A stretch of DNA of 64,000 nt from the IMG/VR virus record IMGVR_UViG_3300027896_005002, positions 62,001 to 126,000 of that record. One strand, 5' to 3'. A model generated the notes under the pieces. The model was not told the origin of the DNA, made no database searches, and saw only the letters and a program-made list of their open reading frames with translations. Position 1 is the first letter of the stretch; every line of letters starts with the position of its first letter. Of this stretch, positions 6,657-21,930 are shown one piece after another. Position numbers and translations under genes: made by a program.

Positions 6657-6739
6657 TGGCGCCCGTGATTCGATTCGAACGAACATTTTCAGCTCCAATT
6701 ACGATTAACTGCTTAGAAGGCAGTCTCGGCTACACGGGC
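6657..6739 (-). tRNA. non-canonical tRNA-Arg(TCT), rearranged D region
   Basis: GCCCGTG/CACGGGC-G-CCA, 8-nt linker, ACTGC-CTTCTAA-GCAGT, TAATCGTAA segment, T-arm GTTCG-TTCGAAT-CGAAT. Confidence 0.78.
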
Positions 6740-6824
6740 TTAATTTCTTAAAATCAAAAAAACTATTGTTATCCTTTTAATCAACTAATAAAACAAAGTT
6801 TTAAATAACATATAATAAAAAAAT

Positions 6825-7616: not shown

Positions 7617-8231
7617 TGTTTTCACACCAGTGTGGACTATCTCTTCATCCAATTGGATGATGGGCGCTAATAAAGGATTATTGATTGAGTTTCTCACCTT
7701 TTAGTCTCTGCACTTTCCAACCTACAAAACACTCTTTCAGTTGGCTTAGCTCAGGATTGCCATATCATTTTACTGATTTAGGGTTCCCTGAATTCACCCA
7801 TTTTCTTCATCAATTGTTACCAATTGAGTCAACCATTTTGATTGAACCCCGGTCCAGAAAGTTTTCCATGACAATTACTACATGTTTATTCTATTCTATC
7901 TTGAATACTCACTCCGTAAATAGACAAGCGTTCAATGAGTACTTCGTAAGTGTCACTTCGGTCCCCTTCTCTTTTACGCGTTCGGTTGTCCTATCCGTAT
8001 ATAAACAGTTCAAGTTGCTACGGCTCCGCTTAAACTTCGACCGCCTTTATTTAGGCAGCCATTGCTGGTGCCTTTGCGCACATTGCAGCGAACTGCAATG
8101 CGAACTGAGCACCGAAAACTGAACCAATTTTGTTGGCAGTTGTTGTTTCATTGGATGATTTAAGAGGCCAACCAATGAGTCCTCTACATGCAATTATCAC
8201 TTCACCCAATCTGTCGAAACCTGACACCCCC
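7591..8231 (-). ncRNA. ssrA: tmRNA split by a T-loop intron (exon1 7841-8231, exon2 7591-7604)
   Basis: 5' GGGGGTGTCAGGTTTCGACAG; acceptor GGGGGTG/CACCTCC with G3-U70; resume context ACAACT-GCC; tag ANKIGSVFGAQFALQFAAMCAKAPAMAA (8051-8137); T-arm CGGGG-TTCAAT|T-CCCCG. Confidence 0.92.
7605..7840 (-). mobile_element. ORF-less group I intron (IC3-like, 236 nt)
   Basis: P1 TCAAT/GTTGA with U-G splice-site pair; core motifs GGCAATCCTGAGC, TGCAGAGACT, AGATAGTCC; terminal G at 7605. Confidence 0.9.
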
Positions 8232-8249
8232 ATAATTTCAAAGAACATT

Positions 8250-8430
8250 AAATCTGGCTGCCGTGCCGCAGCCACCGTTTCATCGAATAGGTACTTACCA
8301 TGGCTATTCGCTATCCTCTACAATGATGCCGAAGCACTAACCACGACACGTCAAGCCAAAGGTATCATATGGTCTCAGCTTGACCGTCCCTGTGACAAGA
8401 GCAAAGGTCGTTAATCATGTCGCCATATGA
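8250..8430 (-). ncRNA. unassigned structured RNA upstream of tmRNA
   Basis: GC-enriched intergenic segment with helices TCATATGG/CCATATGA, CGACAT/GTGTCG, GTCAAGC/GCTTGAC, CGAATAG/CTATTCG, GGCTGC/GCAGCC. Confidence 0.5.
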
Positions 8431-8440
8431 CTTATCAAAT

Positions 8441-8995
8441 TCACATTTTCTCTTTAACAAATATTTTTGCAATGTTATAAGCGTCATCAACACCTCTGTG
8501 ATGACGACCTTCAAGAGGAATATCTAACATTGTTAAAGCTTTATCCATTCCTATAGGTTTTATTTTATGCCTCTCAGCAAATTCATGTTTAAGACTTCTA
8601 CTAATTTTAAATGGTACTTCAATATCATATCTTTTACAATCTTTAGCTAACTGTCGATGATCATAGAAGCCCCAAGAACAAAATATAAAATTACTTAAAC
8701 TTTTCTCTGTTATTAAATAAACATTTTCTCGCCAAATATCCATTACAGTTCTAAAATCTTTTGCAATATCTATGGTAAATTGTTCAATACCGGTCAGTCG
8801 TCTACAAAAATCTGATAACATCGGATTCAATTGTGGTTTAACAAATAAACCTTGTGATAAAATTATGCGATAATCATCAGTAACAATTGAATAACCAATT
8901 TCAATTATTTCATTTTCATTTCGATTTGCTTTTACTCGACCTTCATTAGTATTTCTATCCCAACAAGTTGCTTCAAAATCTACTATTAAATACAT
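8441..8995 (-). CDS. DEDDh 3'-5' exonuclease (ERI-1/KapD-like)
   Basis: VDFEATC, EIIEIG, WGFYD, HHRGVDDA. Confidence 0.9.
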   Translation of the reverse strand: MYLIVDFEATCWDRNTNEGRVKANRNENEIIEIGYSIVTDDYRIILSQGLFVKPQLNPMLSDFCRRLTGIEQFTIDIAKDFRTVMDIWRENVYLITEKSLSNFIFCSWGFYDHRQLAKDCKRYDIEVPFKISRSLKHEFAERHKIKPIGMDKALTMLDIPLEGRHHRGVDDAYNIAKIFVKEKM

Positions 8996-9040
8996 GTTTC
9001 AATATTCAATTCATTTTTCATAGATTACAAATTAATTTAT

Positions 9041-9171
9041 TGGTGCGCGACTCCGGGTCTCGAACCCTAAATTTATTTTAAGCGTAAGGCCTTACCCTAT
9101 TGGGAACCACGTCTTTGCTCCTTACAACGGGCTACCTAAAATAAATTGCAGCCATCCTGCTAGAGTCACGC
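9041..9171 (-). ncRNA. 131-nt tRNA-like RNA with encoded CCA and no anticodon loop
   Basis: 9-bp acceptor GCGTGACTC/GAGTCGCGC, D-arm GCAG/CTGC, 12-bp helix ATTTATTTTAGG/CTTAAAATAAAT, T-arm GGG-TTCGAGA-CCC, ACCA end. Confidence 0.7.
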
Positions 9172-9438
9172 ATATCTTCCAGTTATCAGTTGATTTGTTA
9201 TTTTTCGAACAACAAATCCAGTCGATTCACCAAAAACCTTTCGACCAGTAGTTGTTGCAATTTCAAAATCATCAACAATTTTTATCTGACCTTTATGAAA
9301 AATAATATATTTACCATGATTTGCAGAATCCTTGATGATTTCAGACCATTTTTCATCCAGTAATTTTGCATTATCTATAACTTGTTGTTGAATCTTACCT
9401 ATTTTCTTTTTAGGGCCACTAACAAAAACATTTTTCAT
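9166..9438 (-). CDS. hypothetical protein
   Basis: 90-aa ORF coupled to upstream gene; stop overlaps the tRNA-like RNA. Confidence 0.55.
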   Translation of the reverse strand: MKNVFVSGPKKKIGKIQQQVIDNAKLLDEKWSEIIKDSANHGKYIIFHKGQIKIVDDFEIATTTGRKVFGESTGFVVRKITNQLITGRYA

Positions 9439-9839
9439 TTTACATCCATAATTGCTAAAGTTGTTAATATAAACATAATTATCAAATGAATTGATTGATC
9501 AATAGCTATTGTTGTATAAAACCAATAATCAGATTGAAATTCTTTTTTCGGATCATGAAACTTTCCATACAATTTCCAAACTACAGTGTCCTGAACAAAA
9601 TGAGTAAAAGTATAAAAAAACGATAAAATCAATGCTGCCCATAAGCAGATCTTAATACTAAACAATATGCCTATACAGCATGCAATAAAAAGAAATGTTC
9701 CTGTGATTGCAGAATGTAATAAGCAAATTAAAGGATTAGACGACTTTGACGTAGCCATTTTTCTTGATTGTAACAGCCAGTCTGATAAAAAATGCGATAA
9801 AATAAGTGTTATAATAAGACTTAACGGCATATTATTCAT
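9435..9839 (-). CDS. DUF3307-like membrane protein
   Basis: LSHFLSDWLLQ..K, H..H..D, DQSIH pattern with TM segments. Confidence 0.7.
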   Translation of the reverse strand: MNNMPLSLIITLILSHFLSDWLLQSRKMATSKSSNPLICLLHSAITGTFLFIACCIGILFSIKICLWAALILSFFYTFTHFVQDTVVWKLYGKFHDPKKEFQSDYWFYTTIAIDQSIHLIIMFILTTLAIMDVK

Positions 9840-9885
9840 AATTTCTCCTAAATTGATATTTTAGTAATTTATAAAGGATGTTAAT

Positions 9886-10176
9886 ATGAAAACAATTCTT
9901 TTTTTAGCATTTCTTTTAACATCTGACTATGAATATCAACTTGATGCTCTTACCAATAGTTGTAATTTGTTATATGGTCATAACTGGCAAATCTGTAAAA
10001 TTTTGACCCTACCTTATGACATCACTGATTCATTAAACTTGCCAAATATTTTTAGTGGCCGAATAATTGACCCAGGATATGTCTGGGAAAACACCACTAG
10101 AGATTCATGTTATCTAGTCGTAAAATATTGGCGTTATGGCATCATAAAATATAAAACTTTTTGGTTCATTAAGTAA
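9886..10176 (+). CDS. hypothetical protein, possible signal peptide
   Basis: SD AAGGA; MKTILFLAFLL start. Confidence 0.5.
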   Translation: MKTILFLAFLLTSDYEYQLDALTNSCNLLYGHNWQICKILTLPYDITDSLNLPNIFSGRIIDPGYVWENTTRDSCYLVVKYWRYGIIKYKTFWFIK

Positions 10177-10351
10177 TTATATAGTACTCGAAAAGTTTAA
10201 TTGGTTGATTGACTTTTTTACATGCTTCTATAGCAATTTTACTTGATATTTTTAGTAAATCTTCAGAGATAGTATGAAGTCCTGCATCCTCAAAATTATT
10301 AGACATTTTTATACATTTGTCTGCTATTTTTAATAAATGTCGTCTTTTCAT
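10169..10351 (-). CDS. hypothetical protein
   Basis: 60-aa ORF with SD-like AAGGA. Confidence 0.45.
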   Translation of the reverse strand: MKRRHLLKIADKCIKMSNNFEDAGLHTISEDLLKISSKIAIEACKKVNQPIKLFEYYIIT

Positions 10352-10371
10352 ACAAATCCTTAAGATTAAAA

Positions 10372-10445
10372 TGGGACTGGTAGGAGTCGAACCTACGACC
10401 TCAACTTTGTAAGAGTTGCATTCTGTACCACTGAAATACAGTCCC
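10372..10445 (-). tRNA. tRNA-Val(TAC)
   Basis: GGGACTG/CAGTCCC, CAACT-CTTACAA-AGTTG. Confidence 0.92.
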
Positions 10446-11436
10446 GATTATTCAAATTTTTAAATTCTCTTACTAAATGTGACATTCTAGTTGTACTAGT
10501 TTGCCACTTATTTGCTAATCTAGAAATTAAACCATATTCATTTATATCTATAACCATAGCTAATTCAACAAAAATTTGTTTTTTCTTATTTAAACGTTGT
10601 GATTCACACGGTGACAATTTTTTAATATTATTAATTTTAAAAAATCGACTTAATTGTCTTTCAGATATAGCAAGCTTACTAGCAATTGTTTTATTATCTA
10701 ATCCTTCATCAACTAATTGAATTATTTCTTTTGCTTTATTAGAAACATCATTAATTACAATTTCTTTTTGTAATTTAATTTCATTTGTAACATTTAAGCT
10801 TTTTGTTTCTAAAAATTGTTTTAATTGATTAATAACTGTGTCAAAATTTTTACAAATAGCTCTAGCATGAATATTTATTACCTTCCAACCTCTTTCAATA
10901 ATATATTTTTCACGATCAACATAATAAGATTTTAGTTCATTATTAAAATAATGAGCATTGCCATTGACTTCTATATCAATTTTTAAATTTATTATTGCAA
11001 AATCCATTCTATAATTTCTGTCAAAATCATCTGGTGTATATTCTTGAATAATTTTTTCATCAACATTACATTCTAACCATTGTCTTAATATTTTCTCAGG
11101 ATATGTTTCTTTTTTCTTTCGCCAAGGATGATTTATTCTAGTTTTTAACCACTTTGATGTACTTTTTGACAATCGTTTTTTAGATTCTTCTGTATGTTGA
11201 ACTGGATATTTCTTTCTAGCTAATATCATTGCTTCACTTAAATTACGTCTATTTTTAATTGCAAGTTTTGTAATAAATCTTGGAAAACGACCTAAATGTC
11301 TTATTTCTCGCAATGATAAACCATTTTTATAATACAATTCTTTTACTTTATCGATGTCATCTTTAGTTACACATTTATGATTTGTAAATGCACCATTATT
11401 TGTAAAAGATCTATTACATTTTTGACATTTTATCAT
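10393..11436 (-). CDS. Zn-finger + DUF559-type putative homing endonuclease + HTH
   Basis: CQKC..H.C N-terminus; TYPE..YRMDF..DIEVNGNAHY..DRE; last codons run into tRNA-Val. Confidence 0.75.
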   Translation of the reverse strand: MIKCQKCNRSFTNNGAFTNHKCVTKDDIDKVKELYYKNGLSLREIRHLGRFPRFITKLAIKNRRNLSEAMILARKKYPVQHTEESKKRLSKSTSKWLKTRINHPWRKKKETYPEKILRQWLECNVDEKIIQEYTPDDFDRNYRMDFAIINLKIDIEVNGNAHYFNNELKSYYVDREKYIIERGWKVINIHARAICKNFDTVINQLKQFLETKSLNVTNEIKLQKEIVINDVSNKAKEIIQLVDEGLDNKTIASKLAISERQLSRFFKINNIKKLSPCESQRLNKKKQIFVELAMVIDINEYGLISRLANKWQTSTTRMSHLVREFKNLNNRDCISVVQNATLTKLRS

Positions 11437-11443
11437 ATTAAAA

Positions 11444-11518
11444 TGGGTGTAGCTAGATTTGAACTAGCGCATACCACCTTATCAGAGTGGTGCCGTAACC
11501 AAGCTTGGCTATACACCC
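11444..11518 (-). tRNA. tRNA-Ile(GAT)
   Basis: GGGTGTA/TACACCC, CCACT-CTGATAA-GGTGG. Confidence 0.92.
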
Positions 11519-11823
11519 GTTAAATTCTTATGTTTAATTATTCCTGATTCATTTTCTTCCCAAAAAGAAATTTCATAATTTGGTAATTCTTCTTTTAATT
11601 TTTTTGCTAATTTCATTCCAATTTCATTCATCTCTTTTGATTTACCTGGCTTAAAAGTTGTAAAATCTTCTTCAAAACAATCATCATAAAATGTAATCCA
11701 GTTTTCAAACTCATTTGCTAATTGTTTTGATATTGGAAGATCTTCATAATCAATCATAACACCAGTTTTATCATTCCATATACCAGAACTTGTAAAATCA
11801 GGCATTACTTTTATTTTTTTCAT
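11509..11823 (-). CDS. hypothetical protein
   Basis: 104-aa ORF; stop lies inside tRNA-Ile 5' end. Confidence 0.55.
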   Translation of the reverse strand: MKKIKVMPDFTSSGIWNDKTGVMIDYEDLPISKQLANEFENWITFYDDCFEEDFTTFKPGKSKEMNEIGMKLAKKLKEELPNYEISFWEENESGIIKHKNLTGV

Positions 11824-12197
11824 TTTAACTCAAATAAATGATATTTTGTTTTACCAGTAAAATATTTTCCATATACTTTAGAATCATCAATATGTAAATC
11901 AATTTTCATTCTTTCGCAATATTCTGCTTTTGTCTTATTCCATAAATCTTCATCAATCCAAGGTCCATTGTCTTCATATCTTATTAGTGTGCCTATAGAT
12001 TTATGATAGTCTATGATAGAAAATAAATGAGTGTATATAATATTGAAATTCTGTATTTTTAATTTAAATTCATTTGTGATTGTCTCGCCAGTTATTATAT
12101 GTACTTCATGATCATTTTTAACAAGAAGATCACTCATTACAGAAAATAATTCTGGTCCTTTATCGATAACGCCATGAAAATCTAATCCTAACTTCAT
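11820..12197 (-). CDS. HAD-superfamily-like protein
   Basis: Start moved to MKLGLDFHGVID (SD AGGAGA); HIITG, K, HIDDS motifs; ORF-track N-terminus is tRNA-Ala. Confidence 0.6.
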   Translation of the reverse strand: MKLGLDFHGVIDKGPELFSVMSDLLVKNDHEVHIITGETITNEFKLKIQNFNIIYTHLFSIIDYHKSIGTLIRYEDNGPWIDEDLWNKTKAEYCERMKIDLHIDDSKVYGKYFTGKTKYHLFELK

Positions 12198-12213
12198 TTT
12201 TCTCCTTTTAATA

Positions 12214-12289
12214 TGGTGGAGCTGACCGGGATCGAACCGGTGACCTCCTGCTTGCAAAACAGGCGCTCTCCCAATTGAGCTACAGCCCC
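12214..12289 (-). tRNA. tRNA-Ala(TGC)
   Basis: GGGGCTG/CAGCTCC with G3-U70, loop TTTGCAA, CCA. Confidence 0.96.
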
Positions 12290-12290
12290 A

Positions 12291-12497
12291 TTAATTAATT
12301 GAACACTGCTTTTTTAATTTTCGTGCAGCACGAGCAGCACTACTAAAATATCCAGGATGTTCTAGCTTATATTTTGCCGAAAGTCCCGGATGTTCTTTCC
12401 TATATGTTCGAGCTGCTTTAATAAATTTTTTATGATATTTATAATGTTCACAATTTTTACAATTCATTTTATACCGTCCTATCTTCTTAATCAACAA
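12291..12497 (-). CDS. small basic hypothetical protein
   Basis: CKNC motif, two (K/L)EHPG repeats. Confidence 0.45.
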   Translation of the reverse strand: MLIKKIGRYKMNCKNCEHYKYHKKFIKAARTYRKEHPGLSAKYKLEHPGYFSSAARAARKLKKQCSIN

Positions 12498-13353
12498 AAG
12501 CTACAAATTTTGCACCGGCTGCCTGACTTTCAGTATTGAGAACAACTCGATGCCAAATATTTCCTAAATCAAGTGTTCGATGTTCTTTATGTGTTATTTT
12601 ACCTTTTACCCAAACAGTTGCATTTCTTTGACGAACTTGCCAACTAATCCTTGGATTTTTTTGATCTTTTGGATCAAGGGCTTTAAATTCTTCTTCAGTC
12701 AATCCAATTGACCGAGATTGTTCATTGAATCGAGAAATATAAACTTTAGTACCACCTGATCGATAAAGATTTTCTGCAAAATGAGAATTTCCACGACCTC
12801 TGCTCATTGGTTCATGTCGATGAATTACTGTCAAAGATCCAGAAGGCACTTGAAAAGTCGGTTCAGCAATGAACATAAATTCACCCTGACGATGAATCTT
12901 TCGTCCTGAATTTAATTTTCGATGCCGTTTATGCATACGATTTGCTTTAAGTCCTTCTTGTTGTTCAACTTCCAAAACTTCTTTTGGTTTCAAATTTTGT
13001 TTTGCTTGAAAAACAGTTGCTGCTTTTTCAGGAACTGCACAAGTAAACCAGTTTCGTTCATCATGTCCGCAAAGAAATCTTGAAATTGATACTCTTCGTG
13101 GATCACTTAATTGAGAAAAAGTCGGATGACCATTCGGGTCTTTAACAAGAAGTAAAAGATGACGATCCTTTTTTTGAATATCAGTGATCATCATTTCAAT
13201 TTCTTTTTTAACTCGAATGTCAAAAAATTCACCTTCCGAATCTTTCCGAATATCAATCGAAAAAGACTGATTGTTATTCCAACGATTGTCAGGTTCTGAA
13301 AATTTCACTCGAGCTCCCATTAAAGAGAACTTTTTTTCAATAATTGTATTCAT
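12487..13353 (-). CDS. hypothetical protein
   Basis: Long ORF; start MNTIIEKK chosen because a 52-aa ORF (13358-13516) occupies the upstream part. Confidence 0.65.
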   Translation of the reverse strand: MNTIIEKKFSLMGARVKFSEPDNRWNNNQSFSIDIRKDSEGEFFDIRVKKEIEMMITDIQKKDRHLLLLVKDPNGHPTFSQLSDPRRVSISRFLCGHDERNWFTCAVPEKAATVFQAKQNLKPKEVLEVEQQEGLKANRMHKRHRKLNSGRKIHRQGEFMFIAEPTFQVPSGSLTVIHRHEPMSRGRGNSHFAENLYRSGGTKVYISRFNEQSRSIGLTEEEFKALDPKDQKNPRISWQVRQRNATVWVKGKITHKEHRTLDLGNIWHRVVLNTESQAAGAKFVAFVD

Positions 13354-13569
13354 TAATTCACCTTGACCTTGATTTGTTTTTGTGTGATCCATCAACTATA
13401 TATCTATAGCGAGGACCATCTTTTGTGTAAATTATTTCATGATCCCGTGCATATTTTTTATCTGCTCTCAATCGTAAAAGTTCGATTTTATAATGACATG
13501 TTAAACAATTTTTCATAATAATGTTGTTCCCATAACCAGGCTTCTGTTTTATCTCTACATTTGTCTAAG

Positions 13570-13724
13570 CCCTCGACCCGTCCGTCATAGCGTTGCTCAC
13601 CCGCTAGGACTGTTTGAGGTTGCACCCTCGGAAGTGTAAACGACCAATTAAGTCTCCTTCCTTAAGCAATAGTGGCCTGAGTTTCCTCACCGATAATCTA
13701 ATATCATCGGCGCGTAGAGTCGGA
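13570..13724 (-). ncRNA. unassigned multi-hairpin structured RNA downstream of tRNA-Thr
   Basis: Closing helix CGACTC/GGGTCG around hairpins CCGATGAT/ATTATCGG, TGAG-GAAA-CTCA, TTAAG/CTTAA, GAGG/CCTC, TAGCG/CGCTA. Confidence 0.6.
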
Positions 13725-13742
13725 ACAACATTTTGAATCAAA

Positions 13743-13826
13743 AGCTGGAGGAGAGATTTGAACTCCCGACGGTGTTTCCACTCCGGATTACAAATCCGGT
13801 GCACTCGACCACTATGCGACTCCAGC
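13743..13826 (-). tRNA. tRNA-Thr(TGT) with long variable arm
   Basis: GCTGGAG/CTCCAGC, CCGGA-TTTGTAA-TCCGG, extra arm GTG-GAAA-CAC. Confidence 0.85.
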
Positions 13827-14649: not shown

Positions 14650-14726
14650 TGGTGTTGATGAGTGGAGTTGAACCACCGACCTTCTGATTATGATTCAGAT
14701 GCTGCTACCGACTGAGCTACATCAAC
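14650..14726 (-). tRNA. tRNA-Met/Ile2(CAT), elongator type
   Basis: GTTGATG/CATCAAC, TCTGA-ATCATAA-TCAGA, CCA. Confidence 0.88.
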
Positions 14727-14744: not shown

Positions 14745-14779
14745 AAAAAAAAGCCCCGTTGTTTGTGGCAACAGGGCTT
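14745..14779 (-). terminator. intrinsic terminator (3:4 hairpin of attenuator 1)
   Basis: AAGCCCTGTTG-CCACAAA-CAACGGGGCTT followed by U-tract. Confidence 0.88.
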
Positions 14780-14809
14780 TTTAAATTCTTATATATAAGC
14801 CCTGTTACA

Positions 14810-14890
14810 CTATGTGGCTCCTCTTGCTGTACTAATCGTAATACGCATAGATTTGACTACCACGAGTAACTTTATAAAATTATAATGCAT
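14810..14890 (-). CDS. leader peptide MHYNFIKLLVVVKSMRITISTARGAT
   Basis: Hand translation; stop TAG 3 nt before region 2. Confidence 0.7.
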   Translation of the reverse strand: MHYNFIKLLVVVKSMRITISTARGAT

Positions 14891-14941
14891 ATTTATCCTT
14901 TTGAGTAATAATCAAGTAAAAAGTCATAGATGGCCATTTTA

Positions 14942-15544
14942 TCAATAAAATATTAATTTTTTATTTTTCATTAAAATATCATTTATATTTTTAATGTCTT
15001 TTAAAATATCAAAAATTATTTTTTTATGTCCTTCTTTTTGTAGATTGATCACAGGTATTGACCAATTATTTTTATCAGATTTAGTAATTAATTCAGCTAA
15101 TTTAATAGCTTGACCTGTTCCTCCCGAAGCTTCACCATCTTTCGTCCAACATATAACTAAATCAGTTGGTTTATCTAAATTAGCTCCTAAAATTTGAAAA
15201 CAATTTCTAGACATCAATGCTTTTGTAAATTCTTTCAATCTATTCCATTCACAAATATCTCTAATACTCCAAACACTTTCTGCGTAATCAATCGCAGTAT
15301 CACTGTCAACATTCGGACCGCCAAAATATAATTCTGATGGATGTCTTTGAAATAACTTTTTTGGTAAATAAATTTCTTTTTTTCCTTTAACTTCATCACA
15401 TCCATATTCAAAAGCAGAATCTGCTCCTTCTGCTGCACCACTTCGCAATGTCCATCCATTCAAAGCAAAAGCTTTAGCAATGTCAATAATTAAAGTTATG
15501 ACATTACTTGGCGTTTCTCTCGATCCAATGCCAGTGTAAATCAA
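14942..15544 (-). CDS. SLOG-fold (DprA/YspA-like) protein
   Basis: YTGIGSRETP, LRSGAAEGADSAFE, CWT..G..SGGTGQAI. Confidence 0.75.
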   Translation of the reverse strand: MIYTGIGSRETPSNVITLIIDIAKAFALNGWTLRSGAAEGADSAFEYGCDEVKGKKEIYLPKKLFQRHPSELYFGGPNVDSDTAIDYAESVWSIRDICEWNRLKEFTKALMSRNCFQILGANLDKPTDLVICWTKDGEASGGTGQAIKLAELITKSDKNNWSIPVINLQKEGHKKIIFDILKDIKNINDILMKNKKLIFY

Positions 15545-15601
15545 TGAACATCACTCATCAAATCTAAAACAATAGTATCATTGTCATCAAATATGTCATT
15601 T

Positions 15602-16080
15602 TCATACAAAACATGAAAAACAATCGCCAAATTCATTTTCAATCGACCAATTTAACTTTGCAAGTGCTTTTGCATCATCCTCCGTTAATTTATCAATAAT
15701 ATCATTTACATCAACTGAAAAAATGACATCATGTTCTGCACCTTCAATAAGCCTTTCAGTATATTTTGACAAAATCTTAAGTCCTTGAAAAGCATTATCA
15801 CCTTCCCAACTGGATTCAGTACTCTTAAAAATTTGTTTTAATTGTTCTCTAGTCATAATCCTCCATTAATGCATTATAAAATTACTAAATCTTTATATTT
15901 ACGAAAATTTCGCAAAACTTTTTTATCACATTGACCAAAAACAAATGTTTTTCCAGGACGTAAGTTAATTGTCCCATCATCTATTTTGATTATATAAGAT
16001 TGTTTTCCTGTATTAATGACTTTAATTTCTTTGTCACAAATCTTAATTACTTTGTCCTGAACCTCAAATACAACTTCCAT
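15602..16080 (-). CDS. two small hypothetical proteins (15602-15856, 15874-16080)
   Basis: Co-oriented ORFs in a tightly packed operon. Confidence 0.5.
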
Positions 16081-16088
16081 TGTTTTTC

Positions 16089-16544
16089 CTATTGTTGCTC
16101 AATTATTTCATCTACCCCTTCATCAAGACTTGGCTCTTCAAACTTTGCAGTCATCTTATCAATTACAGTTTGCCATTGTTCTCTTGATATATTTCTAGAA
16201 TCTAACATTCTATAACCTAAGGGATTTGGCTTTTTACAATATACAAATATTCTTTTATCAAAAGCTTTACAATGCGATAACCAAGCTGCACGATGCTGTT
16301 TATCAATATTAGTTTCATCAATTATCACATTAAATCCATTAACAATAGCCTTTTCAAGACATGTAATCGTCATTTCATGAACAAGAGGTTCTAAATTTTC
16401 AGTGTACAAATAATATCCATTTATCATTTGTCGAAATGAATCTCTATTAACAATTACTATATTTGGCTCTTCTTTAACTTTCATACGAGACCACGTACTC
16501 TTACCTGAGCCTGGAAGCCCAATCATTATATAAACTATTTTCAT
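16089..16544 (-). CDS. P-loop kinase (AAA_33 / T4 PNK kinase-like)
   Basis: GLPGSGKS, VNRDSFR, IIDETN, R..R. Confidence 0.85.
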   Translation of the reverse strand: MKIVYIMIGLPGSGKSTWSRMKVKEEPNIVIVNRDSFRQMINGYYLYTENLEPLVHEMTITCLEKAIVNGFNVIIDETNIDKQHRAAWLSHCKAFDKRIFVYCKKPNPLGYRMLDSRNISREQWQTVIDKMTAKFEEPSLDEGVDEIIEQQ

Positions 16545-17123
16545 TAATTTTTCCTAAAATATTTCATTGTATGCCATATTATATATAAAAAAGTAAAAAC
16601 TATTACTGGCACAATCATTAATTTAAAAGTAAACAGCATCATCCTCAAGCTTGCAACAAACACACTAGACAATATCATTAAAACAAAAGCTGCAAGAAAT
16701 AATGAACATACAAAAAATAACATTTTTAAAAATATATTAGGTTTTTTCATACTATCCATCCTTTTTTTGTAATGAAAAAATATTCATTCTTAAAATATAT
16801 TTTTCATCAGGTAATGAAGGTTTAAAATTCGTATATAAAGCATTAATATCAATCTCGTGGATTGTATAAATAATAGGCCATATTTTCAATATTAATTTTG
16901 GACACCATCGTTTTTTAAAAGCTTGCCACCAATCTCGAGGATATTTTATTACTTTTTTTGTTACATTTTCTCCCCATAAAAAACCTTGTATACGTAATTC
17001 TAATTCTTTAGCAAAAACCTCTGTAATATCAAATTTTTCAAAACAAAAATATCTAGAAAATACTTTTGTAAATGCTATTTGAATTTTTTGAAGTCGAATT
17101 TCTTCAGAACAAAAATTATTCAT
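16544..17123 (-). CDS. small membrane protein (16544-16759) and hypothetical protein (16752-17123)
   Basis: Overlapping start/stop codons; first ORF has two TM segments. Confidence 0.5.
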
Positions 17124-18031
17124 GAAGTAATATTAGACCTTAATGTAATATATGGTGTAGTCAAAGTTAAAGGATCTGGCATTGTCCAAAGTAGTCTACC
17201 AAGCTCATCGACAGATTGATATGCTGCAGTATTAATAAAATGCCACGTTCGCACATCATCTGCTGGATCATTAGCATTTTGTTCTGACATTGATTGATCT
17301 CTATAAGCCAATCCTATACCTGCACCAGTAGCAACGCTTGGTGTTCCTCTAGCTGTTTCTGCACCTCTATATCCATTTATACCTCTCACAGTCGGTGATG
17401 CAGGAGTTGACATAGCCTCATTCATTTTTTTCCAACCACGTTCTTCCAATTTTGCTATTCGATTATGAATTCTGTCTCTTTGATACATTACATTATCATG
17501 TAACACATAAAATATTTTTTGTTTACAATGATCGATAGCATTAATTTGTGATTCTAACAATTTATCAGAAAATAGAGGATTATTTATATAGGCAAGACCA
17601 CAACAAGAGAGATCAACATTAGACATTATACTTATTAACGCAGATACGGCTTCAGAATCATTTTTAAATTTTTTTCTCGGTCTTATTATTTGAACAATTG
17701 CATTGTTTCGTTTAAAAGTCCACGGTTGATTTATAATTTGTAATCCCAAATACATTGCAGCAATATCAAAATCAGGCCCAGGAAGCTGAACGAATCCACA
17801 AGCAATCAATCTATCATATATTCTTCTTGCTGACCGTGGCAATGCCATTATGTCTACGTCGTGTATCTTAAGATCAGCCAAACTATCCCTGACAGCGCCA
17901 CCAAAAATAGCTGCATCAGTGTCAGACAATAAACCATCAATATCACCATCAAGATAATCTGACATAGCTTTCCGTATCTTAATGACATCTAAATCATAAT
18001 CATTTCGAACTTTAACTACGTCATCATTCAT
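17120..18031 (-). CDS. tRNA nucleotidyltransferase/poly(A) polymerase head-domain protein
   Basis: IFGGAVRD..DVDI signature, VDLSCC, RIAKLEERGW; start MNDDVV overlaps upstream stop. Confidence 0.75.
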   Translation of the reverse strand: MNDDVVKVRNDYDLDVIKIRKAMSDYLDGDIDGLLSDTDAAIFGGAVRDSLADLKIHDVDIMALPRSARRIYDRLIACGFVQLPGPDFDIAAMYLGLQIINQPWTFKRNNAIVQIIRPRKKFKNDSEAVSALISIMSNVDLSCCGLAYINNPLFSDKLLESQINAIDHCKQKIFYVLHDNVMYQRDRIHNRIAKLEERGWKKMNEAMSTPASPTVRGINGYRGAETARGTPSVATGAGIGLAYRDQSMSEQNANDPADDVRTWHFINTAAYQSVDELGRLLWTMPDPLTLTTPYITLRSNITS

Positions 18032-18674
18032 ATTTCTTCCAGACATAAATGACATTCTTCGTCGACTCTAAAGACCTACTAAATAACCACGGAAATCTAT
18101 ACTCTTTATGCGACAAATTCAAAATCTTCTTCTTTGCGTGCACTGTCTCATGACCAACCATTATATATCTATCAACATTCTTTATAACCCATTCTTCATC
18201 TATGCCAAACATGTTACCACCATTATCATGTTCAGCTTCATTATATTTATGAGTAATCCAACATCCAATGACGGTCTTAGGTCTATATTTTTTTATAGCT
18301 GCAATACCATCAAGCTTAATAACATCGTCAGGATATTTAGTTGTCGGCTGACGCATCATCGTGTAATAAGCTTTTATCTCTGGAGTCTCCATGTACCTTG
18401 AATCTGTAGCTGGAACTCCAAGACACCTCGCTAATGCACCATGACCTGCACCAATCTCTATCGTAGTCGTAAGATCTATTTCCTGTTTAAACCAATCCAC
18501 TAATTCAATGGTCGGAAAACAATAAAATCCGTTTTTATGTCCAAATAATGCAAGATGTGTTTGAGGAATTTTGGATAATACAGAAACAGGAACTACTTTC
18601 AACAGATCATTGTCTAACAAAACATGATCTAAATAAGAAACATCTTCATTTACAAGAAAAGCTGCCATAATCAA
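18024..18674 (-). CDS. SAM-dependent methyltransferase-like protein
   Basis: TIEIGAGHGALARCL glycine-rich motif I. Confidence 0.5.
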   Translation of the reverse strand: MIMAAFLVNEDVSYLDHVLLDNDLLKVVPVSVLSKIPQTHLALFGHKNGFYCFPTIELVDWFKQEIDLTTTIEIGAGHGALARCLGVPATDSRYMETPEIKAYYTMMRQPTTKYPDDVIKLDGIAAIKKYRPKTVIGCWITHKYNEAEHDNGGNMFGIDEEWVIKNVDRYIMVGHETVHAKKKILNLSHKEYRFPWLFSRSLESTKNVIYVWKKYE

Positions 18675-18685: not shown

Positions 18686-18769
18686 TGCTCGAGACCGGAA
18701 TCGAACCGGTATGGAATTGCTTCCGAAGGATTTTAAGTCCTTTGCGTCTACCTGCTTCGCCACTCGAGC
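18686..18769 (-). tRNA. tRNA-Leu(TAA)
   Basis: GCTCGAG/CTCGAGC, AAGGA-CTTAAAA-TCCTT, long variable arm. Confidence 0.93.
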
Positions 18770-19237
18770 TTAACCTTCATTTGTAGATCTACCTGTACCT
18801 TCACAAAAAGTACATTTCTTCCCAGGTCGAAATGGTTCAGGTAAAAGCCAACCACGTCCTTCACATTTTTTACAATTAAAATATAGCTTACGTATATTAA
18901 ACCATTTCATAATAAAAAACTGTATAAAAAGATATCTCCATTGACCAAATTGCCATTTAATTCCCCACGGAAACATTTTGTCATAAAATGATTTAGGTTC
19001 AACGGGTCTTCTAAATTGAGGTAATCCAAATGGAGGTAACATTTATGTGTCCTTTGGAAAAATTATCGGAAATAATAAACAACAAATACAAACCAAAATA
19101 AAAACAAAAAAGACAACAGGCCACAATAAAATGATTTCAACACTATCTTTCGTAGTCTGAGCTTGTAAAATCAATTTATTATGATACAAGAAAAATAGAA
19201 TTAAAACGACTATTAACCAAATGTATAAAATAATCAT
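18770..19237 (-). CDS. small Zn-ribbon protein (18770-19042) and membrane protein (19043-19237)
   Basis: CKKCEGRG..CTFCEGTG (DnaJ-like CxxCxGxG pair); hydrophobic second ORF. Confidence 0.5.
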
Positions 19238-19263
19238 TTAAGGCCTATCATCACATTAAAAAA

Positions 19264-19344
19264 TAGGAGAGGAGGGATTTGAACCCTCATCTGCCACATA
19301 CCGTTACGATTATCCGCCTTATAAGAGCGGCTCGGTACTCTCCT
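19264..19344 (-). tRNA. non-canonical tRNA-Ile(TAT), rearranged D region
   Basis: AGGAGAG/CTCTCCT, 7-nt linker TACCGAG, CCGCT-CTTATAA-GGCGG, ATAATCGTAACGGTA.., T-arm GAGGG-TTCAAAT-CCCTC. Confidence 0.75.
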
Positions 19345-19345
19345 G

Positions 19346-19928
19346 TTATTTTATTGATCCTGGTTTATAAATATCGCCATTTCTATTCAGCACATTAAAC
19401 TGTACAATAGTACTTCTATATGTTTTATATGGACCTTCCATCATCATTGTTTCTTCTCGTTCTTTAATTATTCTTTTCTCTATTGTCGTTAACAAATGAA
19501 TTTTAACAACAATACATGGTAACGGACATATATACAATGAATTATCTTTAACACTCCAAAAAAGTCCGACCCAAAAATCATACCATGCAAAAAATAACTT
19601 ACACTTAATTATCGGTCTATCAATAAAAAGATGATATTTAACAATCAACAAAAAAGTCTTCCATTTCAACTTAATTATCGTCAATCTCTTTAACAAATTT
19701 AAGATATCCTTTTAAAAACTTTTTAACTGATCTACCCTTTTCATCAAAAACTTCAACACCATAATTATCTTGCTGCTGATTAAAACGAATCTTTGTCATT
19801 CGACAAAAATATTTATTTCCTTGTTTATCCTCAACTATAGAAGTCTTTTTTGCTGCTGCAGATGCTGCCCCTCTGGTGCATTGTATTGAGGTCACACCAT
19901 CTTTTTCACTAATTATTGCTTCTCCCAT
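19346..19928 (-). CDS. two hypothetical proteins (19346-19696, 19671-19928)
   Basis: Co-oriented overlapping ORFs. Confidence 0.5.
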
Positions 19929-20128
19929 TAAATTTCTACTCCTATTGGTTCTTTGTTTTTCTGCAATCGTTGCATTTTTACAACACTATCTTCAGATAAA
20001 TTTAATTTACTGATTACGTCTTTAGCTTTACGACGAGCATCAACATCATCAGTTTCTGAAAATGGTATTATAATCTTTAATTGATAGTCCATAAGTTTTT
20101 CCAAGAAAAGAGGACAACCTTGTCATTT

Positions 20129-20641
20129 TTAATTTAATGTTTTTCGATCTTCGTAACAATGTTGAATAATACATGCTGACTTATCTAACAATGACTGAAT
20201 CTGCTTAGAAACATCCTTCAATTGCTTATAATAATCCATCACTTCTTTAAATTCAGGATTACTATCTAATTGTAAAACAACTGCAGAATTTAAATCTTTC
20301 TCAGTCAATGCAATTATAGTCTTACTCGGAACATTTTTACAAACAAAAATATTTGCTCCCCATATCATTCCCATCAATCCTTTAAGCAAATTCTCTCTCT
20401 TAGTCTCCGGTTCAATAACATCCCTACCAAACTTTCTAAAATCCGAATAAACTACTGCATTAGTGATCAAACAATCAACTCTTGTATCTTCTTCTCTTTC
20501 AAGCGCAGCAAACAAATCAGCTAGAACATCAGGAACAACATGATCAAAAGCAGTCTTAACATAACCTTTTACATTCACAAATTGTAAAAACTTATCCCAA
20601 GACTCGGTTACTTTTGAATAATAAAAAAATACATCATCCAT
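20129..20641 (-). CDS. stand-alone fragment resembling a large-phage major capsid protein
   Basis: ITNAVVYSDFRKFGRDVIEPETKRENLLKGLMGMIWGANIFVCKNVP recalls the A-domain segment of HK97-fold capsid proteins (from memory). Confidence 0.5.
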   Translation of the reverse strand: MDDVFFYYSKVTESWDKFLQFVNVKGYVKTAFDHVVPDVLADLFAALEREEDTRVDCLITNAVVYSDFRKFGRDVIEPETKRENLLKGLMGMIWGANIFVCKNVPSKTIIALTEKDLNSAVVLQLDSNPEFKEVMDYYKQLKDVSKQIQSLLDKSACIIQHCYEDRKTLN

Positions 20642-20722
20642 AATTATTCTTTCCAGACAAAATTATCCTCCTTTCCTAAAGATAATATATGTCATTAAAA
20701 GAATAAATTTATGGTATGGAAT

Positions 20723-21076
20723 TCAAACTTCTATAATTATGTTATTCCATGCACCCGGACAAATCGTAGCTGTCGGCAGCAAACTTGCCATATTCTGAGC
20801 ACCAACAGAATTAAAACTATGTATTATTATATTCTTAGGCTGTCGTCCTGGGTGCGCCTCAAGCCATTGCGCTACCTCATAACCAGTATCTTTCCCAGAT
20901 TTAACATATGTCTGACCGCCCAAGTCGTGATCAAGAAATAGATATTGCCAAGTGCTCTCAATCAAATGTTGTATTGTACTTTTAACTGTTGAAGTTTGTA
21001 CAACTTCATGCCCAATTAATTTTTGTCGAAAAATCTTTTGTCTATCATCATCATCATCTAAAATTAATATTCTCAT
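20723..21076 (-). CDS. receiver-like protein (cyclic-phosphate-processing REC type)
   Basis: ILILDDD, LFLDHDLG, TGYEVAQWL, IIIHSFNSVGAQNM. Confidence 0.75.
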   Translation of the reverse strand: MRILILDDDDDRQKIFRQKLIGHEVVQTSTVKSTIQHLIESTWQYLFLDHDLGGQTYVKSGKDTGYEVAQWLEAHPGRQPKNIIIHSFNSVGAQNMASLLPTATICPGAWNNIIIEV

Positions 21077-21078
21077 TT

Positions 21079-21930
21079 TTATTTCTCAAATTTATAATAA
21101 AAAAACCAACCATTAGCGGATTTTCGTGTACCTTTTAATACTGTTATAATATTTGATGGATAAGTATTTAATTGCTTAGCTGCTTGTTTTTTGTTCGAAA
21201 ATTCTAATTTTTGACCATTTTTTACAGCAAAAAATATTTTTCTCTTAAGTTGTTCAACAAAATCATCATACATTTTTTTAGTTATATACTTAAAAGAAAA
21301 TATCCAATTATTTTTAGATTTAACTTTTCCATGCAAAATACAACTAATAAACCTTTGACTAACCTTAGTATAAATAGATGCTTCGTATTGTGTTTTAAAT
21401 TTCTTTAATTCATTAACATTTCTTGCATAAAAAGCTTTTCCACCATGACACTTACTATGCTTAATTCTTTCTTCAATTTTATTAAACCTTTTATTCTGAG
21501 ATTTACCCTGTTTTTTTCTGGCTTTATCTGACTTAAAATAATTTATTAAACCCAAACTTAAATTTTTTCGTGCTTCTAAATTAAACTTTCCATTACTTCC
21601 GCCTTCTTTTAAATTATATCCAAAAGTTTTATTAGTACTATTAAACTTTTTAATATATTCTTTTTCTTTTTTATCAAGTTCTAATTGTGTATTGCATTTA
21701 CATAATATGTCCCAAGTAAATTTATCAAAACCATATTTCATTAAAGCATTATGAAAATATGATTGATTTTTTGGCTTTTTTATTAAACTTTTCAAACAAA
21801 CTCGATGATGAGCTTTAATTCTACCTTGTAATGATCGCCATGTTTGACCAATATACACTTTATTTGTTAAAATATTTGTAGCTTTATAAATGATACTTTG
21901 TTCATACAAGTATTCATCTAAAATATTCAT
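21079..21930 (-). CDS. GIY-YIG homing endonuclease with NUMOD-type repeats
   Basis: IIYKATN..NKVYIGQT..R; FHNALMKYG; GYNLKEGG; EASI..V / QAAKQL repeats. Confidence 0.88.
   Translation of the reverse strand: MNILDEYLYEQSIIYKATNILTNKVYIGQTWRSLQGRIKAHHRVCLKSLIKKPKNQSYFHNALMKYGFDKFTWDILCKCNTQLELDKKEKEYIKKFNSTNKTFGYNLKEGGSNGKFNLEARKNLSLGLINYFKSDKARKKQGKSQNKRFNKIEERIKHSKCHGGKAFYARNVNELKKFKTQYEASIYTKVSQRFISCILHGKVKSKNNWIFSFKYITKKMYDDFVEQLKRKIFFAVKNGQKLEFSNKKQAAKQLNTYPSNIITVLKGTRKSANGWFFYYKFEK

What the first reader, a model, noticed from the sequence alone, without database searches (positions are those of the whole stretch)
14745..14900. Attenuator 1: leader-peptide attenuation of a tRNA array, with control codons matching the downstream tRNAs
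Seen: SD, 26-codon leader, 1:2 helix over the L-L-V-V codons, a perfect 10-bp 2:3 antiterminator and a 3:4 terminator, 18 nt upstream of tRNA-Met. Downstream on the same strand lie tRNAs for Met, Thr, Ala, Ile(GAT), Val and Arg(TCT/CCT). In leader codons 10-26 (VVVKSMRITISTARGAT), 13 of 17 encode exactly those six amino acids, including GTA, ATT, ACA, GCA and AGA. Known: this is the thr/ilv attenuation mechanism, which normally controls biosynthetic or synthetase operons. Inference: the phage senses a shortage of charged tRNAs by ribosome stalling and then transcribes its own copies of those tRNAs. I am not aware of this being described.
Basis: partly seen in the sequence, partly recalled or inferred. 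Interest (0 to 1): 0.88.

Follow-up and report, generated by a model that had tools for sequence, protein, structure and literature searches.

The report
Leader-peptide attenuators gating phage tRNA arrays
A 416-kb phage places a small translated leader and a switchable terminator in front of each block of its tRNA genes, and each leader is written in the codons that its own block decodes, so the phage probably makes its tRNAs only when ribosomes run short of them, a control circuit I could not find described.

Summary
On the minus strand, 14900-14745 carries a Shine-Dalgarno site and a 26-codon ORF. Its stop lies 3 nt before a perfect 10-bp antiterminator arm. A 14-bp/U8 terminator that competes with it ends 18 nt before tRNA-Met.

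It is not a one-off. A second unit sits before the Lys-His-Leu-Ser... array at 28720-28510.

- **Codon match:** each leader is enriched for codons read by its own downstream tRNAs (P=0.007, 0.005, 5e-7), not by the other arrays (P>0.4), and only in frame.
- **Relatives:** related phages keep all three units with compensatory changes in the antiterminator, and leader codons track the tRNA set. AGG appears only where Arg-CCU is present, CGG only with Arg-CCG or Arg-UCG, and Val codons move with tRNA-Val.
- **Specificity:** only 2 of 7 strong terminators in the window have this form; simulated sequence gave none.

Best reading: classical ribosome-mediated attenuation rewired into feedback control of tRNA supply. 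Six literature searches found no description. Nothing has been tested experimentally; the host and promoters are unknown.

The parts
14896..14900 (-). Shine-Dalgarno AAGGA of the Att1 leader, 5 nt before the ATG
   Evidence: Read from the sequence. The same AAAAGGAT block is conserved in the relative's Att1 homologue.
14810..14890 (-). Att1 leader ORF, 26 codons plus TAG. Control codons GTG GTA ATG ATT ACG ATT ACA GCA AGA ACA cluster in the second half.
   Evidence: In-frame cognate codons are 10/25 against 4 and 3 in the other frames. P=0.0067 against the phage's codon usage.
14859..14870 (-). Region 1 (over the Leu-Leu-Val-Val codons). It pairs with 14818-14804 in the free-RNA fold and overlaps only 3 nt of region 2.
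   Evidence: MFE fold; weak support.
14797..14808 (-). Region 2, the 5' arm of the antiterminator (core AACAGGGCTT 14806-14797), starting 3 nt after the leader stop codon
   Evidence: The 2:3 hairpin folds at -17.2 kcal/mol.
14768..14779 (-). Region 3, shared by the antiterminator (with region 2) and the terminator (with region 4)
   Evidence: Exact reverse complement of region 2.
14745..14782 (-). Intrinsic terminator 3:4 (14-bp stem, 6 G-C pairs, 7-nt loop) plus T8; it also reads as a terminator on the + strand
   Evidence: -19.2 kcal/mol.
14650..14726 (-). tRNA-Met(CAU), first gene of unit 1, 18 nt after the T-run
5638..13826 (-). Rest of unit 1: tRNA-Thr(UGU) 13826-13743, Ala(UGC) 12289-12214, Ile(GAU) 11518-11444, Val(UAC) 10445-10372, tmRNA with group I intron 8224-7613, and D-armless tRNA-like Arg(UCU) about 6739-6657 and Arg(CCU) 5717-5638. 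HNH/DUF559 endonuclease genes and other ORFs are interspersed.
   Evidence: No strong minus-strand terminator lies in between.
28510..28720 (-). Att2, a second attenuator of the same design. SD GGAG 28720-28717; 46-codon leader 28710-28570; region 2 at 28585-28573 (inside the end of the ORF); region 3 at 28549-28537; terminator 28546-28516 plus T-run.
   Evidence: (z=-6.25). Cognate codons are 30/45, P=0.003. A homologue exists in the relative.
18686..28435 (-). Unit 2. tRNAs: Lys(UUU), Lys(CUU), His, Leu(CAA), Leu(UAG), Ser(UGA), Asp, Ser(CGA), Met, Trp-like(CCA), Glu, Gly(UCC), Tyr, Ile-like(UAU), Leu(UAA). It also holds an RNA ligase at 22982-21927.
14942..18055 (-). Tail of unit 2, leading into Att1: CCA-adding-like gene 18055-17120, polynucleotide kinase 16544-16089, and the DprA-like / deoxyribosyltransferase-like gene 15544-14942
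   Evidence: The relative keeps the DprA-like gene directly upstream of its Att1 homologue.
1..1242 (+). Distal part of unit 3: tRNA-Gln(UUG, cut by the window edge), Pro(CGG), Gln(CUG), Arg(UCG), Arg(GCG). Its attenuator Att3 lies about 1.5 kb before window position 1, at L006 1339-1463.
   Evidence: and (z=-6.30). Leader cognate codons are 10/20 against a background of 0.076, P=5.5e-7.

Best explanation
Att1 is one of at least three ribosome-mediated (leader-peptide) transcription attenuators in this huge phage. Each sits in front of a block of tRNA genes, and each leader is written largely in the codons that the downstream tRNAs decode.

Mechanism. Steps 2 to 4 are inferred from anatomy.
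1. Transcription enters the leader and a ribosome loads at the SD/ATG.
2. If all leader codons are decoded promptly, the ribosome reaches the stop codon. The stop lies 3 nt before region 2 in Att1, and inside or abutting region 2 in the other units. The ribosome physically covers region 2, so region 3 pairs with region 4 and RNA polymerase terminates at the U-run just before the first tRNA.
3. If any tRNA species served by the array is scarce, the ribosome stalls upstream. The cause could be a codon the host decodes poorly, or host tRNAs depleted or cleaved during infection. Region 2 stays free and pairs with region 3 (10-13 bp). The terminator cannot form and the tRNA block is transcribed.
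4. As the phage's own tRNAs accumulate and are charged, stalling stops and termination resumes.

The result is closed-loop control of decoding capacity, read at the level of individual isoacceptors.

Shown here: the sequence anatomy, its non-randomness, its recurrence, its conservation with compensatory changes, and the covariation between codons and tRNAs.

Inferred: translation of the leaders, conditional termination, the direction of the response, and feedback by the phage's own tRNAs.
For: - Anatomy: SD, ORF, mutually exclusive 2:3 and 3:4 hairpins and a U-run.
- Recurrence: the same design occurs three times in one genome without sequence similarity between the copies.
- Codon match: diagonal-only enrichment, P=0.0067, 0.0047 and 5.5e-7, with all off-diagonal P>0.4. 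This is replicated in a relative: 0.0093, 0.034 and 1.3e-8, off-diagonal at least 0.38.
- Frame: in-frame against out-of-frame matches are 10 against 4/3, 30 against 21/12, and 10 against 1/1.
- Specificity: 2 of 7 strong terminators have this form, both before tRNA arrays, and 0 in 15 simulations. Ordinary terminators at 59640 and 48810 lack it.
- Conservation: in Att3 homologues from four other contigs the 10-bp antiterminator is paired in 5/5 sequences, with 3 pairs changed on both sides. Terminator changes are absorbed by G-U pairs.
- Homologues of Att1 and Att2 keep the ORF, the position of the stop relative to region 2, and perfect 2:3 complementarity despite different sequences.
- Isoacceptor covariation: 17/17 Arg codons in Gln/Pro/Arg leaders are cognate to that phage's own Arg tRNAs. 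AGA, which makes up 53% of the phage's Arg codons, is never used there. It appears instead in both Att1-type leaders, whose units carry Arg(UCU).
- CCU appears together with Pro(GGG) and CGG with Arg(CCG) in L087.
- Val codons sit in whichever leader has tRNA-Val downstream.
- Ribosome-masking folds: an A-site at Att1 codons 1-25 gives the antiterminator; codon 26 or the stop gives the terminator.
- Closest Rfam model: the best sub-threshold match is the threonine operon leader (28 bits, E=0.0014).
Against: - There are no expression data of any kind. The host, the promoters and the transcript ends are unknown.
- Att1 alone is statistically modest (P about 0.007). Its match at the level of synonymous codons is not significant by itself (9/13 against 6.9 expected, P=0.18). 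Its CGT codon and several N-terminal codons have no cognate downstream tRNA.
- The Att1 1:2 helix barely touches region 2. Untranslated RNA is therefore predicted to read through, unlike trp.
- The fold simulations are equilibrium calculations on truncated RNA. For two relatives (the L087 Gln/Pro/Arg unit and L017) they mostly predict the terminator.
- The L017 leader is not discriminating (21/38 in frame against 19 and 24 out of frame).
- The relatives are few and phylogenetically nested, so the covariation rests on perhaps 3-5 independent events.
- Protein genes share the units, so tRNAs need not be the only regulated cargo.
- Amino-acid starvation would also open the attenuator, although more tRNA would not help in that case.
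Confidence: 0.78

Rival explanations
1. A classical amino-acid-starvation attenuator. The leaders sense charging of a few amino acids, as thr/ilv leaders do, to regulate the operon as a whole, including the endonuclease and RNA-repair genes. The match to the tRNA genes is at amino-acid level only and has no link to tRNA supply.
For: The architecture is the thr/ilv type. Protein genes lie in the units. For Att1 alone the synonymous-codon match is not significant.
Against: Pooled synonymous-level matching is 113/139 against 91.7 expected. Arg codons match isoacceptors 17/17, with AGG, CGG and CCU appearing only where the corresponding anticodon is present. Val codons move with the tRNA-Val gene between units. 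The leaders sample up to about 12 amino acids, which makes no sense for a biosynthetic signal.
Confidence: 0.08
2. A general sensor of translation-transcription coupling, or a timer. Any delay of the ribosome, from low ribosome availability or early infection, opens the terminator. Codon identity is secondary. The units act as a temporal switch for early versus late expression rather than a codon-specific homeostat.
For: For Att1 and Att2, free or slowly translated RNA is predicted to form the antiterminator by default. The units are arranged in series: Att2, then unit 2, then Att1.
Against: This does not explain diagonal-only, in-frame codon enrichment or its covariation with the tRNA content.
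Confidence: 0.08
3. A conditional terminator controlled by a protein or RNA factor (PyrR/TRAP/LicT-like, T-box-like, or a phage antiterminator). The small ORFs are not translated.
For: The 2:3/3:4 switch would serve any such sensor. There is a weak PyrR sub-threshold hit (21 bits).
Against: No Rfam family reaches its threshold, and there is no T-box. Every one of 9 instances has an SD+ATG ORF whose stop lies between -16 and +3 nt of region 2. The ORFs are kept through indels that sum to multiples of 3. The codon match is frame-specific. No conserved aptamer-like structure lies upstream.
Confidence: 0.04
4. Chance: an ordinary bidirectional terminator after the DprA-like gene, with a fortuitous nearby repeat and a fortuitous short ORF.
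For: The terminator also works on the + strand. AT-rich DNA is full of short ORFs.
Against: 0 of 15 simulated windows gave such a unit. There are three instances in this genome, and homologues in relatives carry compensatory changes. All genes in this region are on the minus strand.
Confidence: 0.02

Closest known systems
Multi-amino-acid leader-peptide attenuators of enterobacterial biosynthetic operons (thrL of thrABC; ilvL of ilvGMEDA; ivbL of ilvBN); the thr leader is Rfam RF00506
   Same: Short SD-led ORF enriched for several control amino acids (Thr/Ile; Leu/Val/Ile). Alternative 2:3 antiterminator and 3:4 terminator. The stop codon is placed so that a terminating ribosome masks region 2. 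Thr_leader is the best sub-threshold Rfam hit for Att1.
   Different: The regulated genes are tRNAs (plus tmRNA, homing endonucleases and RNA-repair enzymes), not biosynthetic enzymes. The leaders match anticodons at the level of synonymous codons and sample up to about 12 amino acids. The product of the operon directly relieves the stall. The score is 28 bits against a gathering threshold of 55, so this is not a family member. The setting is a phage genome.
pheST attenuator (pheM leader) of E. coli
   Same: Leader-peptide attenuation controlling a component of the translation apparatus rather than a biosynthetic pathway (from my own knowledge; not tested here).
   Different: It controls an aminoacyl-tRNA synthetase through one amino acid (Phe). 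It does not control tRNA genes and has no multi-isoacceptor leader.
T-box riboswitches
   Same: A terminator/antiterminator switch that reads tRNA status to regulate translation-related genes.
   Different: A T-box binds uncharged tRNA directly through a specifier codon and the T-box sequence, without translation, and controls synthetase or amino-acid genes. No T-box model matches here, and the leaders here are ORFs.
Phage tRNA clusters as described in T4- and T5-like phages
   Same: tRNA genes interspersed with small ORFs and HNH homing endonucleases.
   Different: In the T5 record the region is annotated with many promoters and plain terminators. My scan of 30 kb found no terminator with an antiterminator and leader.

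Membership tests
Ribosome-mediated (leader-peptide) transcription attenuators | Short ORF with a ribosome-binding site and start codon in the 5' leader | tested here: met
   SD AAGGA plus ATG and 26 codons. The same holds in Att2, Att3 and 6 homologues. An ENA gene caller called the 31- and 41-aa leaders on its own.
Ribosome-mediated (leader-peptide) transcription attenuators | Intrinsic terminator (3:4) and a mutually exclusive antiterminator (2:3) sharing region 3 | tested here: met
   In the Att3 family the antiterminator is paired in 5/5 sequences, with 3 compensatory pairs.
Ribosome-mediated (leader-peptide) transcription attenuators | Leader stop codon placed so that a terminating ribosome occludes region 2 | tested here: met
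   The distance from the stop to region 2 is +3 (Att1), -16 (Att2), -7 (Att3), and +3, -7 and 0 in relatives. Masking folds switch to the terminator at the last codons.
Ribosome-mediated (leader-peptide) transcription attenuators | Region 1 that sequesters region 2 when the leader is not translated | tested here: inconclusive
   Clear for Att3: an 8-bp helix UUCGACAG/CUGUCGAA, and the free RNA folds into the terminator. Weak for Att1: the overlap is 3 nt and the free RNA folds into the antiterminator.
Ribosome-mediated (leader-peptide) transcription attenuators | Enrichment of control codons that report the regulated function | tested here: met
   Diagonal-only enrichment in two phages, specific to the reading frame.
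Ribosome-mediated (leader-peptide) transcription attenuators | Read-through depends on leader translation and on the supply of charged tRNA | not testable with these tools
   This needs reporter, Term-seq, Ribo-seq or in-vitro assays.
Threonine operon leader, Rfam RF00506 | Score at or above the curated gathering threshold (55 bits) | tested here: not met
   28 bits, E=0.0014, full-length alignment to the model at 14745-14854 (-). This is a resemblance in architecture, not membership.
T-box riboswitch | Stem I with specifier loop and conserved T-box sequence (Rfam T-box model) | tested here: not met
   No hit at the gathering threshold over the whole window, nor at E up to 10 over 14730-14960.

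The most novel reading that the evidence does not exclude
Huge phages run their tRNA genes under closed-loop control resolved to individual isoacceptors. Each array is gated by a 'codon sampler' peptide that tests, codon by codon, whether the cell can currently decode what the array supplies.

Unit 2 also carries an RNA ligase, a polynucleotide kinase and a CCA-adding-like enzyme, and its leader is rich in Lys, Leu, Ser and His codons. The same switch may therefore act as an alarm that fires when host anticodon nucleases or phage-induced shutoff deplete tRNAs, co-inducing replacement tRNAs and tRNA repair. On this reading, leaders and arrays co-evolve, so that a leader sequence predicts the content of its array.
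Probability: 0.45. Interest if true: 0.93.

Novelty: new variant of a known kind. Interest (0 to 1): 0.9.

Why it matters
**Gap it fills.** Why phages carry tRNAs is debated: codon-usage compensation, host tRNA decay, or escape from tRNA-targeting defences. How their expression is controlled is barely studied.

**What it would be.** A leader peptide that reads the very codons the downstream tRNAs decode would be direct product feedback on decoding capacity. As far as I know this is the first case of leader-peptide attenuation governing tRNA genes. It extends a textbook mechanism to a new class of target, and the sensing is by isoacceptor rather than by amino acid.

**What it makes testable.**
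- What limits translation during infection. The leader spells out which codons the phage 'worries about'.
- A sequence-only predictor linking a leader to the content of its array.

**Practical use.** It offers compact, modular sensors of tRNA availability for synthetic biology.

**Breadth.** The design recurs in several uncultured freshwater or sediment huge phages, so it is a lineage trait and not a curiosity of one genome.

Tried and rejected
- **DprA-like gene as an anchor for relatives.** Homologues at 50-77% identity exist, but their contigs have no tRNAs and no synteny.
- **GenBank phage collection.** No DNA relatives of any of the three units; the only hits are to tRNAs. The one non-tRNA hit, LR756502.1, has no tRNAs within 40 kb.
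- **RNA ligase as an anchor.** It found only a paralogue elsewhere in the same contig, with no tRNAs nearby.
- **Mis-specified pattern.** One Att1 DNA pattern was wrong and wasted a scan. The corrected pattern found only this phage and one relative.
- **Two scans of genome contigs** found nothing.
- **More distant DUF488-bearing phages with tRNA arrays** (L029, L031, L036, L038, L045, L072, L075). No attenuator was seen. In most of them the start of the array lies outside the fetched locus, so this is uninformative.
- **Colinearity.** My impression that the codon order in the Att2 leader follows the tRNA gene order is rejected: Spearman -0.28 to +0.09, all non-significant.
- **A sigma-70 promoter inside the Att1 leader** (TATAAT at 14884-14879). 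There is no usable -35 element, and the hexamer is not conserved in the homologue.
- **TTGATTATT as a general promoter motif.** It recurs upstream of several leaders but is not enriched in the window: 7 matches against 5.4 expected.
- **T-box or another known riboswitch:** no match.
- **T5 as a cultured example:** none found.

Full report
**Source.** The window is contig positions 62001-126000 of IMGVR_UViG_3300027896_005002, a 416-kb uncultured huge phage with 31% G+C. Genes in it use strong Shine-Dalgarno sites. The finding lies on the minus strand.

**1. The observation**

Read 5' to 3' on the minus strand, the region runs as follows.
- The DprA-like / deoxyribosyltransferase-like gene ends at 14942.
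- AAGGA lies at 14900-14896 and the ATG at 14890.
- A 26-codon ORF, MHYNFIKLLVVVKSMRITISTARGAT, stops at TAG 14812-14810.
- Three nt later comes AACAGGGCTT (14806-14797). Its exact reverse complement is at 14779-14770, and a one-mismatch third copy is at 14760-14751.
- The terminator scan returns a 14-bp, 6-G-C stem at 14782-14748 followed by T8.
- tRNA-Met begins 18 nt after the T-run.

So the SD, the 26-codon leader, the perfect 10-bp 2:3 helix, the 3:4 terminator and the 18-nt distance are all as described.

The downstream tRNAs are also as listed. Met, Thr(UGU), Ala(UGC), Ile(GAU) and Val(UAC) are found by ARAGORN. The two Arg genes (UCU, about 6739-6657; CCU, 5717-5638) are unusual tRNA-like genes that ARAGORN misses.

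Two qualifications apply.
- The '1:2' helix seen in the free-RNA fold overlaps region 2 by only 3 nt.
- The 'array' is interspersed with HNH and DUF559 homing-endonuclease genes and other ORFs.

**2. It is not chance and not unique**

My terminator scan of both strands found few strong terminators. Of 7 with at least 4 G-C pairs, only two have an upstream segment of at least 9 nt complementary to the 5' arm. Both of these have an SD+ATG ORF ending at that segment, and both sit directly upstream of a tRNA block. Fifteen first-order Markov simulations of the window gave no such unit. The ordinary terminators at 59640 and 48810 have no antiterminator.

The second unit, Att2, lies at 28720-28510 (z=-6.25).
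- SD GGAG, then a 46-codon leader at 28710-28570.
- A 13-bp antiterminator whose 5' arm lies inside the end of the ORF.
- A terminator at 28546-28516.
- Then the tRNAs Lys, Lys, His, Leu, Leu, Ser, Asp, Ser, Met, Trp-like, Glu, Gly, Tyr.

**3.

I fetched the contig upstream of the window (L006; window position 1 = L006 2971).

At L006 1339-1404 there is an SD-led 21-codon ORF, MLTLRQTQPQQPRQPRSNMLM. Its TGA lies inside a 10-bp antiterminator arm, CATGTGAGAC, which pairs with GTCTCACATG. A terminator with T7 follows (z=-6.30). Here a textbook 1:2 helix (UUCGACAG with CUGUCGAA) is predicted in the free RNA.

Downstream are a DUF488 gene and then tRNA-Pro(UGG), Gln(UUG), Pro(CGG), Gln(CUG), Arg(UCG) and Arg(GCG). 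The leader uses CGA, CAG, CAA, CCG, CGU, CCA and CGG, so each of the six tRNAs has at least one cognate codon. These codons are rare in this AT-rich genome.

**4. Statistics of the codon match**

I used strict wobble rules and codon usage from 40 long ORFs of the window.

| Leader | Own array | Background | P | Other arrays |
|---|---|---|---|---|
| Att1 | 10/25 | 0.175 | 0.0067 | P>0.4 |
| Att2 | 26/45, or 30/45 with the two distal tRNAs of the unit | 0.376 or 0.454 | 0.0047 or 0.0033 | P>0.4 |
| Att3 | 10/20 | 0.076 | 5.5e-7 | P>0.4 |

The match is specific to the reading frame: 10 against 4 and 3 (Att1), 30 against 21 and 12 (Att2), and 10 against 1 and 1 (Att3). This argues that the signal is read by translation.

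For Att1 taken alone the evidence is modest. The strength comes from the pattern across units.

**5. Relatives**

The DprA-like gene was a poor anchor. The DUF488 gene has many relatives at 60-83% identity. Loci fetched through its alignment, a conserved DNA pattern and contig walking gave homologues of all three units.

*Att3 family.* There are five members (alignment A5).
- The 10-bp antiterminator is paired in all five, and three pairs changed on both sides. With the 3' partners slid by 1-3 columns, only 16-42% of cells pair.
- The same changes in region 3 are tolerated in the terminator as G-U pairs.

*Att1 homologue* (L087 1661-1815 = L097 11197-11351).
- It keeps the SD block, the MH start and an ORF of 31 codons, despite indels that sum to a multiple of three.
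- The stop, 3 nt, then region 2 arrangement is preserved.
- A different but perfectly complementary 2:3 pair is present (GCGAGGCTT with AAGCCTCGC).

*Att2 homologue* (L098 5356-5549). It is 79% identical in the alignment and again has its own perfect 10-bp 2:3 pair.

A more distant phage (L017) has an analogous unit before 17 tRNAs. Its tRNA set is so broad that the codon test cannot discriminate.

**6. Covariation of leader and array**

In the relative that carries all three units in tandem, the leader-against-array matrix is again enriched on the diagonal only. P=0.0093, 0.034 and 1.3e-8, with off-diagonal values of at least 0.38.

At isoacceptor level:
- In the four distinct Gln/Pro/Arg leaders, all 17 Arg codons are cognate to that phage's own Arg tRNAs.
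- AGG occurs only in the three arrays that carry Arg(CCU).
- CGG occurs only where Arg(UCG) or Arg(CCG) is present.
- CCU and Pro(GGG) appear together in L087.
- AGA makes up 53% of the phage's Arg codons but is never used in these leaders. It is used in both Att1-type leaders, whose units carry Arg(UCU).

tRNA-Val(UAC) lies in unit 1 of the window phage, and the Att1 leader has Val-Val-Val. In the relative, tRNA-Val lies in unit 2. Its Att1-type leader has no Val codon, while its Att2-type leader has four, three of them cognate.

Pooled over leaders, synonymous-level matching is 113/139 against 91.7 expected. The homologues are not independent, so I treat this as perhaps 3-5 independent events.

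**7. Mechanism**

I folded each leader with a 28-nt ribosome footprint masked at successive A-site codons.

| Unit | Free RNA | Antiterminator when A-site at | Terminator when A-site at |
|---|---|---|---|
| Att1 | antiterminator | codons 1-25 | codon 26 or stop |
| Att2 | antiterminator | codons 1-38 | later codons |
| Att3 | terminator (through 1:2) | codons 2-13 | later codons |

The Att3 antiterminator zone (codons 2-13) holds most of its control codons (5-16). The hairpin energies are balanced: 2:3 at -16 to -21 kcal/mol and 3:4 at -17 to -20 kcal/mol.

These are equilibrium folds of truncated RNA, and they were less clear for two relatives.

The simplest reading is classical attenuation. 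A ribosome that finishes the leader covers region 2 and the terminator forms. A ribosome delayed at any control codon leaves the antiterminator in place.

Because the cargo is the tRNAs that read those codons, the circuit is negative feedback on decoding capacity. Unit 2 also carries an RNA ligase, a polynucleotide kinase and a CCA-adding-like gene. This fits a response to tRNA damage or depletion, but that link is inference.

**8. Comparison with what is known**

- The closest known systems are the multi-amino-acid leaders thrL and ilvL. The Rfam threonine leader is the top sub-threshold match (28 bits against a gathering score of 55, E=0.0014). That is a resemblance in design, not membership.
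- No T-box or other Rfam cis-regulator matches.
- The tRNA region of T5, scanned in the same way, has none.
- Six full-text searches found no paper that describes leader-peptide attenuation of tRNA genes, in phages or in cells. The library lacks most subscription journals, so absence there is not proof of absence.

**9. Verdict**

- It is a new variant of a known mechanism, with a new class of target and a new regulatory logic.
- It remains untested experimentally. The host, the promoters and the transcripts are unknown.

Noticed in passing
window 19344-19264(-), 25377-25299(-), 5717-5638(-), about 6739-6657(-): Four tRNA-like genes in which the D-arm is replaced by about 4-8 nt and the variable region is about 20 nt long. 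Their anticodons are UAU (Ile-AUA), CCA (Trp), CCU and UCU (Arg). Rfam scores them at 31-40 bits and ARAGORN misses them. The two Arg copies share their first 15 nt. The Att2 leader uses ATA three times and TGG once, which suggests these genes are functional decoders.
   Followed up: partly
window 7613-8224(-); L084 1453-2076(-); L087 11270-11684(+): The phage tmRNA gene abuts or overlaps a group I intron (Rfam 91 and 80 bits, with a 16-nt overlap). One relative has the same arrangement, while another has an intact tmRNA at 125 bits. The tmRNA lies inside attenuator-controlled unit 1.
   Followed up: no
window 21927-22982(-), 16089-16544(-), 17120-18055(-); L012: A tRNA-repair-like module (RNA ligase with a PHA02142 OB domain, polynucleotide kinase, CCA-adding-like protein) lies inside unit 2, between Att2 and Att1. 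A paralogue of the RNA ligase at 68% identity sits about 45-55 kb further along the contig, with no tRNAs nearby.
   Followed up: partly
window 27464-27438(-): A 10-bp hairpin pairs AAATCTTCCT with AGGAGGATTT, the SD region of a start codon in the frame of the 371-aa ORF listed as 27532-26417. That frame's first ATG overlaps tRNA-Leu(UAG). The hairpin may occlude translation initiation of a gene lying between tRNA genes.
   Followed up: no
window 14915-14907(-); L006 about 1304; L084, L088, L098 upstream of their leaders: The block TTGATTATT (or TGATTATTA) recurs 16-62 nt upstream of the leader ATG in most of the attenuators, across all three families and several phages. It is not enriched in the window as a whole (7 matches against 5.4 expected). 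It may be a promoter or regulator site specific to these units.
   Followed up: partly
window 10393-11436(-), 13969-14553(-), 23013-24518(-); L006 1978-2955(+): Homing-endonuclease genes (HNH; DUF559 with HTH) sit between the tRNA genes, as in T5. They explain why the tRNA order and unit membership differ between relatives, for example the move of tRNA-Val.
   Followed up: partly
window about 1760-1851(+): A T-arm plus acceptor 3' strand and ACCA (GTAGG TTCAAAT CCTAC CTGGGAC ACCA) lies in the gap between two ORFs on the + strand. No matching 5' half is visible within 75 nt. It may be a tRNA fragment or a split tRNA.
   Followed up: no
L016 3936-4085(+): In a related phage contig ARAGORN reports two adjacent tRNAs with 4-base anticodons (cttg, cttt), that is, 8-nt anticodon loops.
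   Followed up: no
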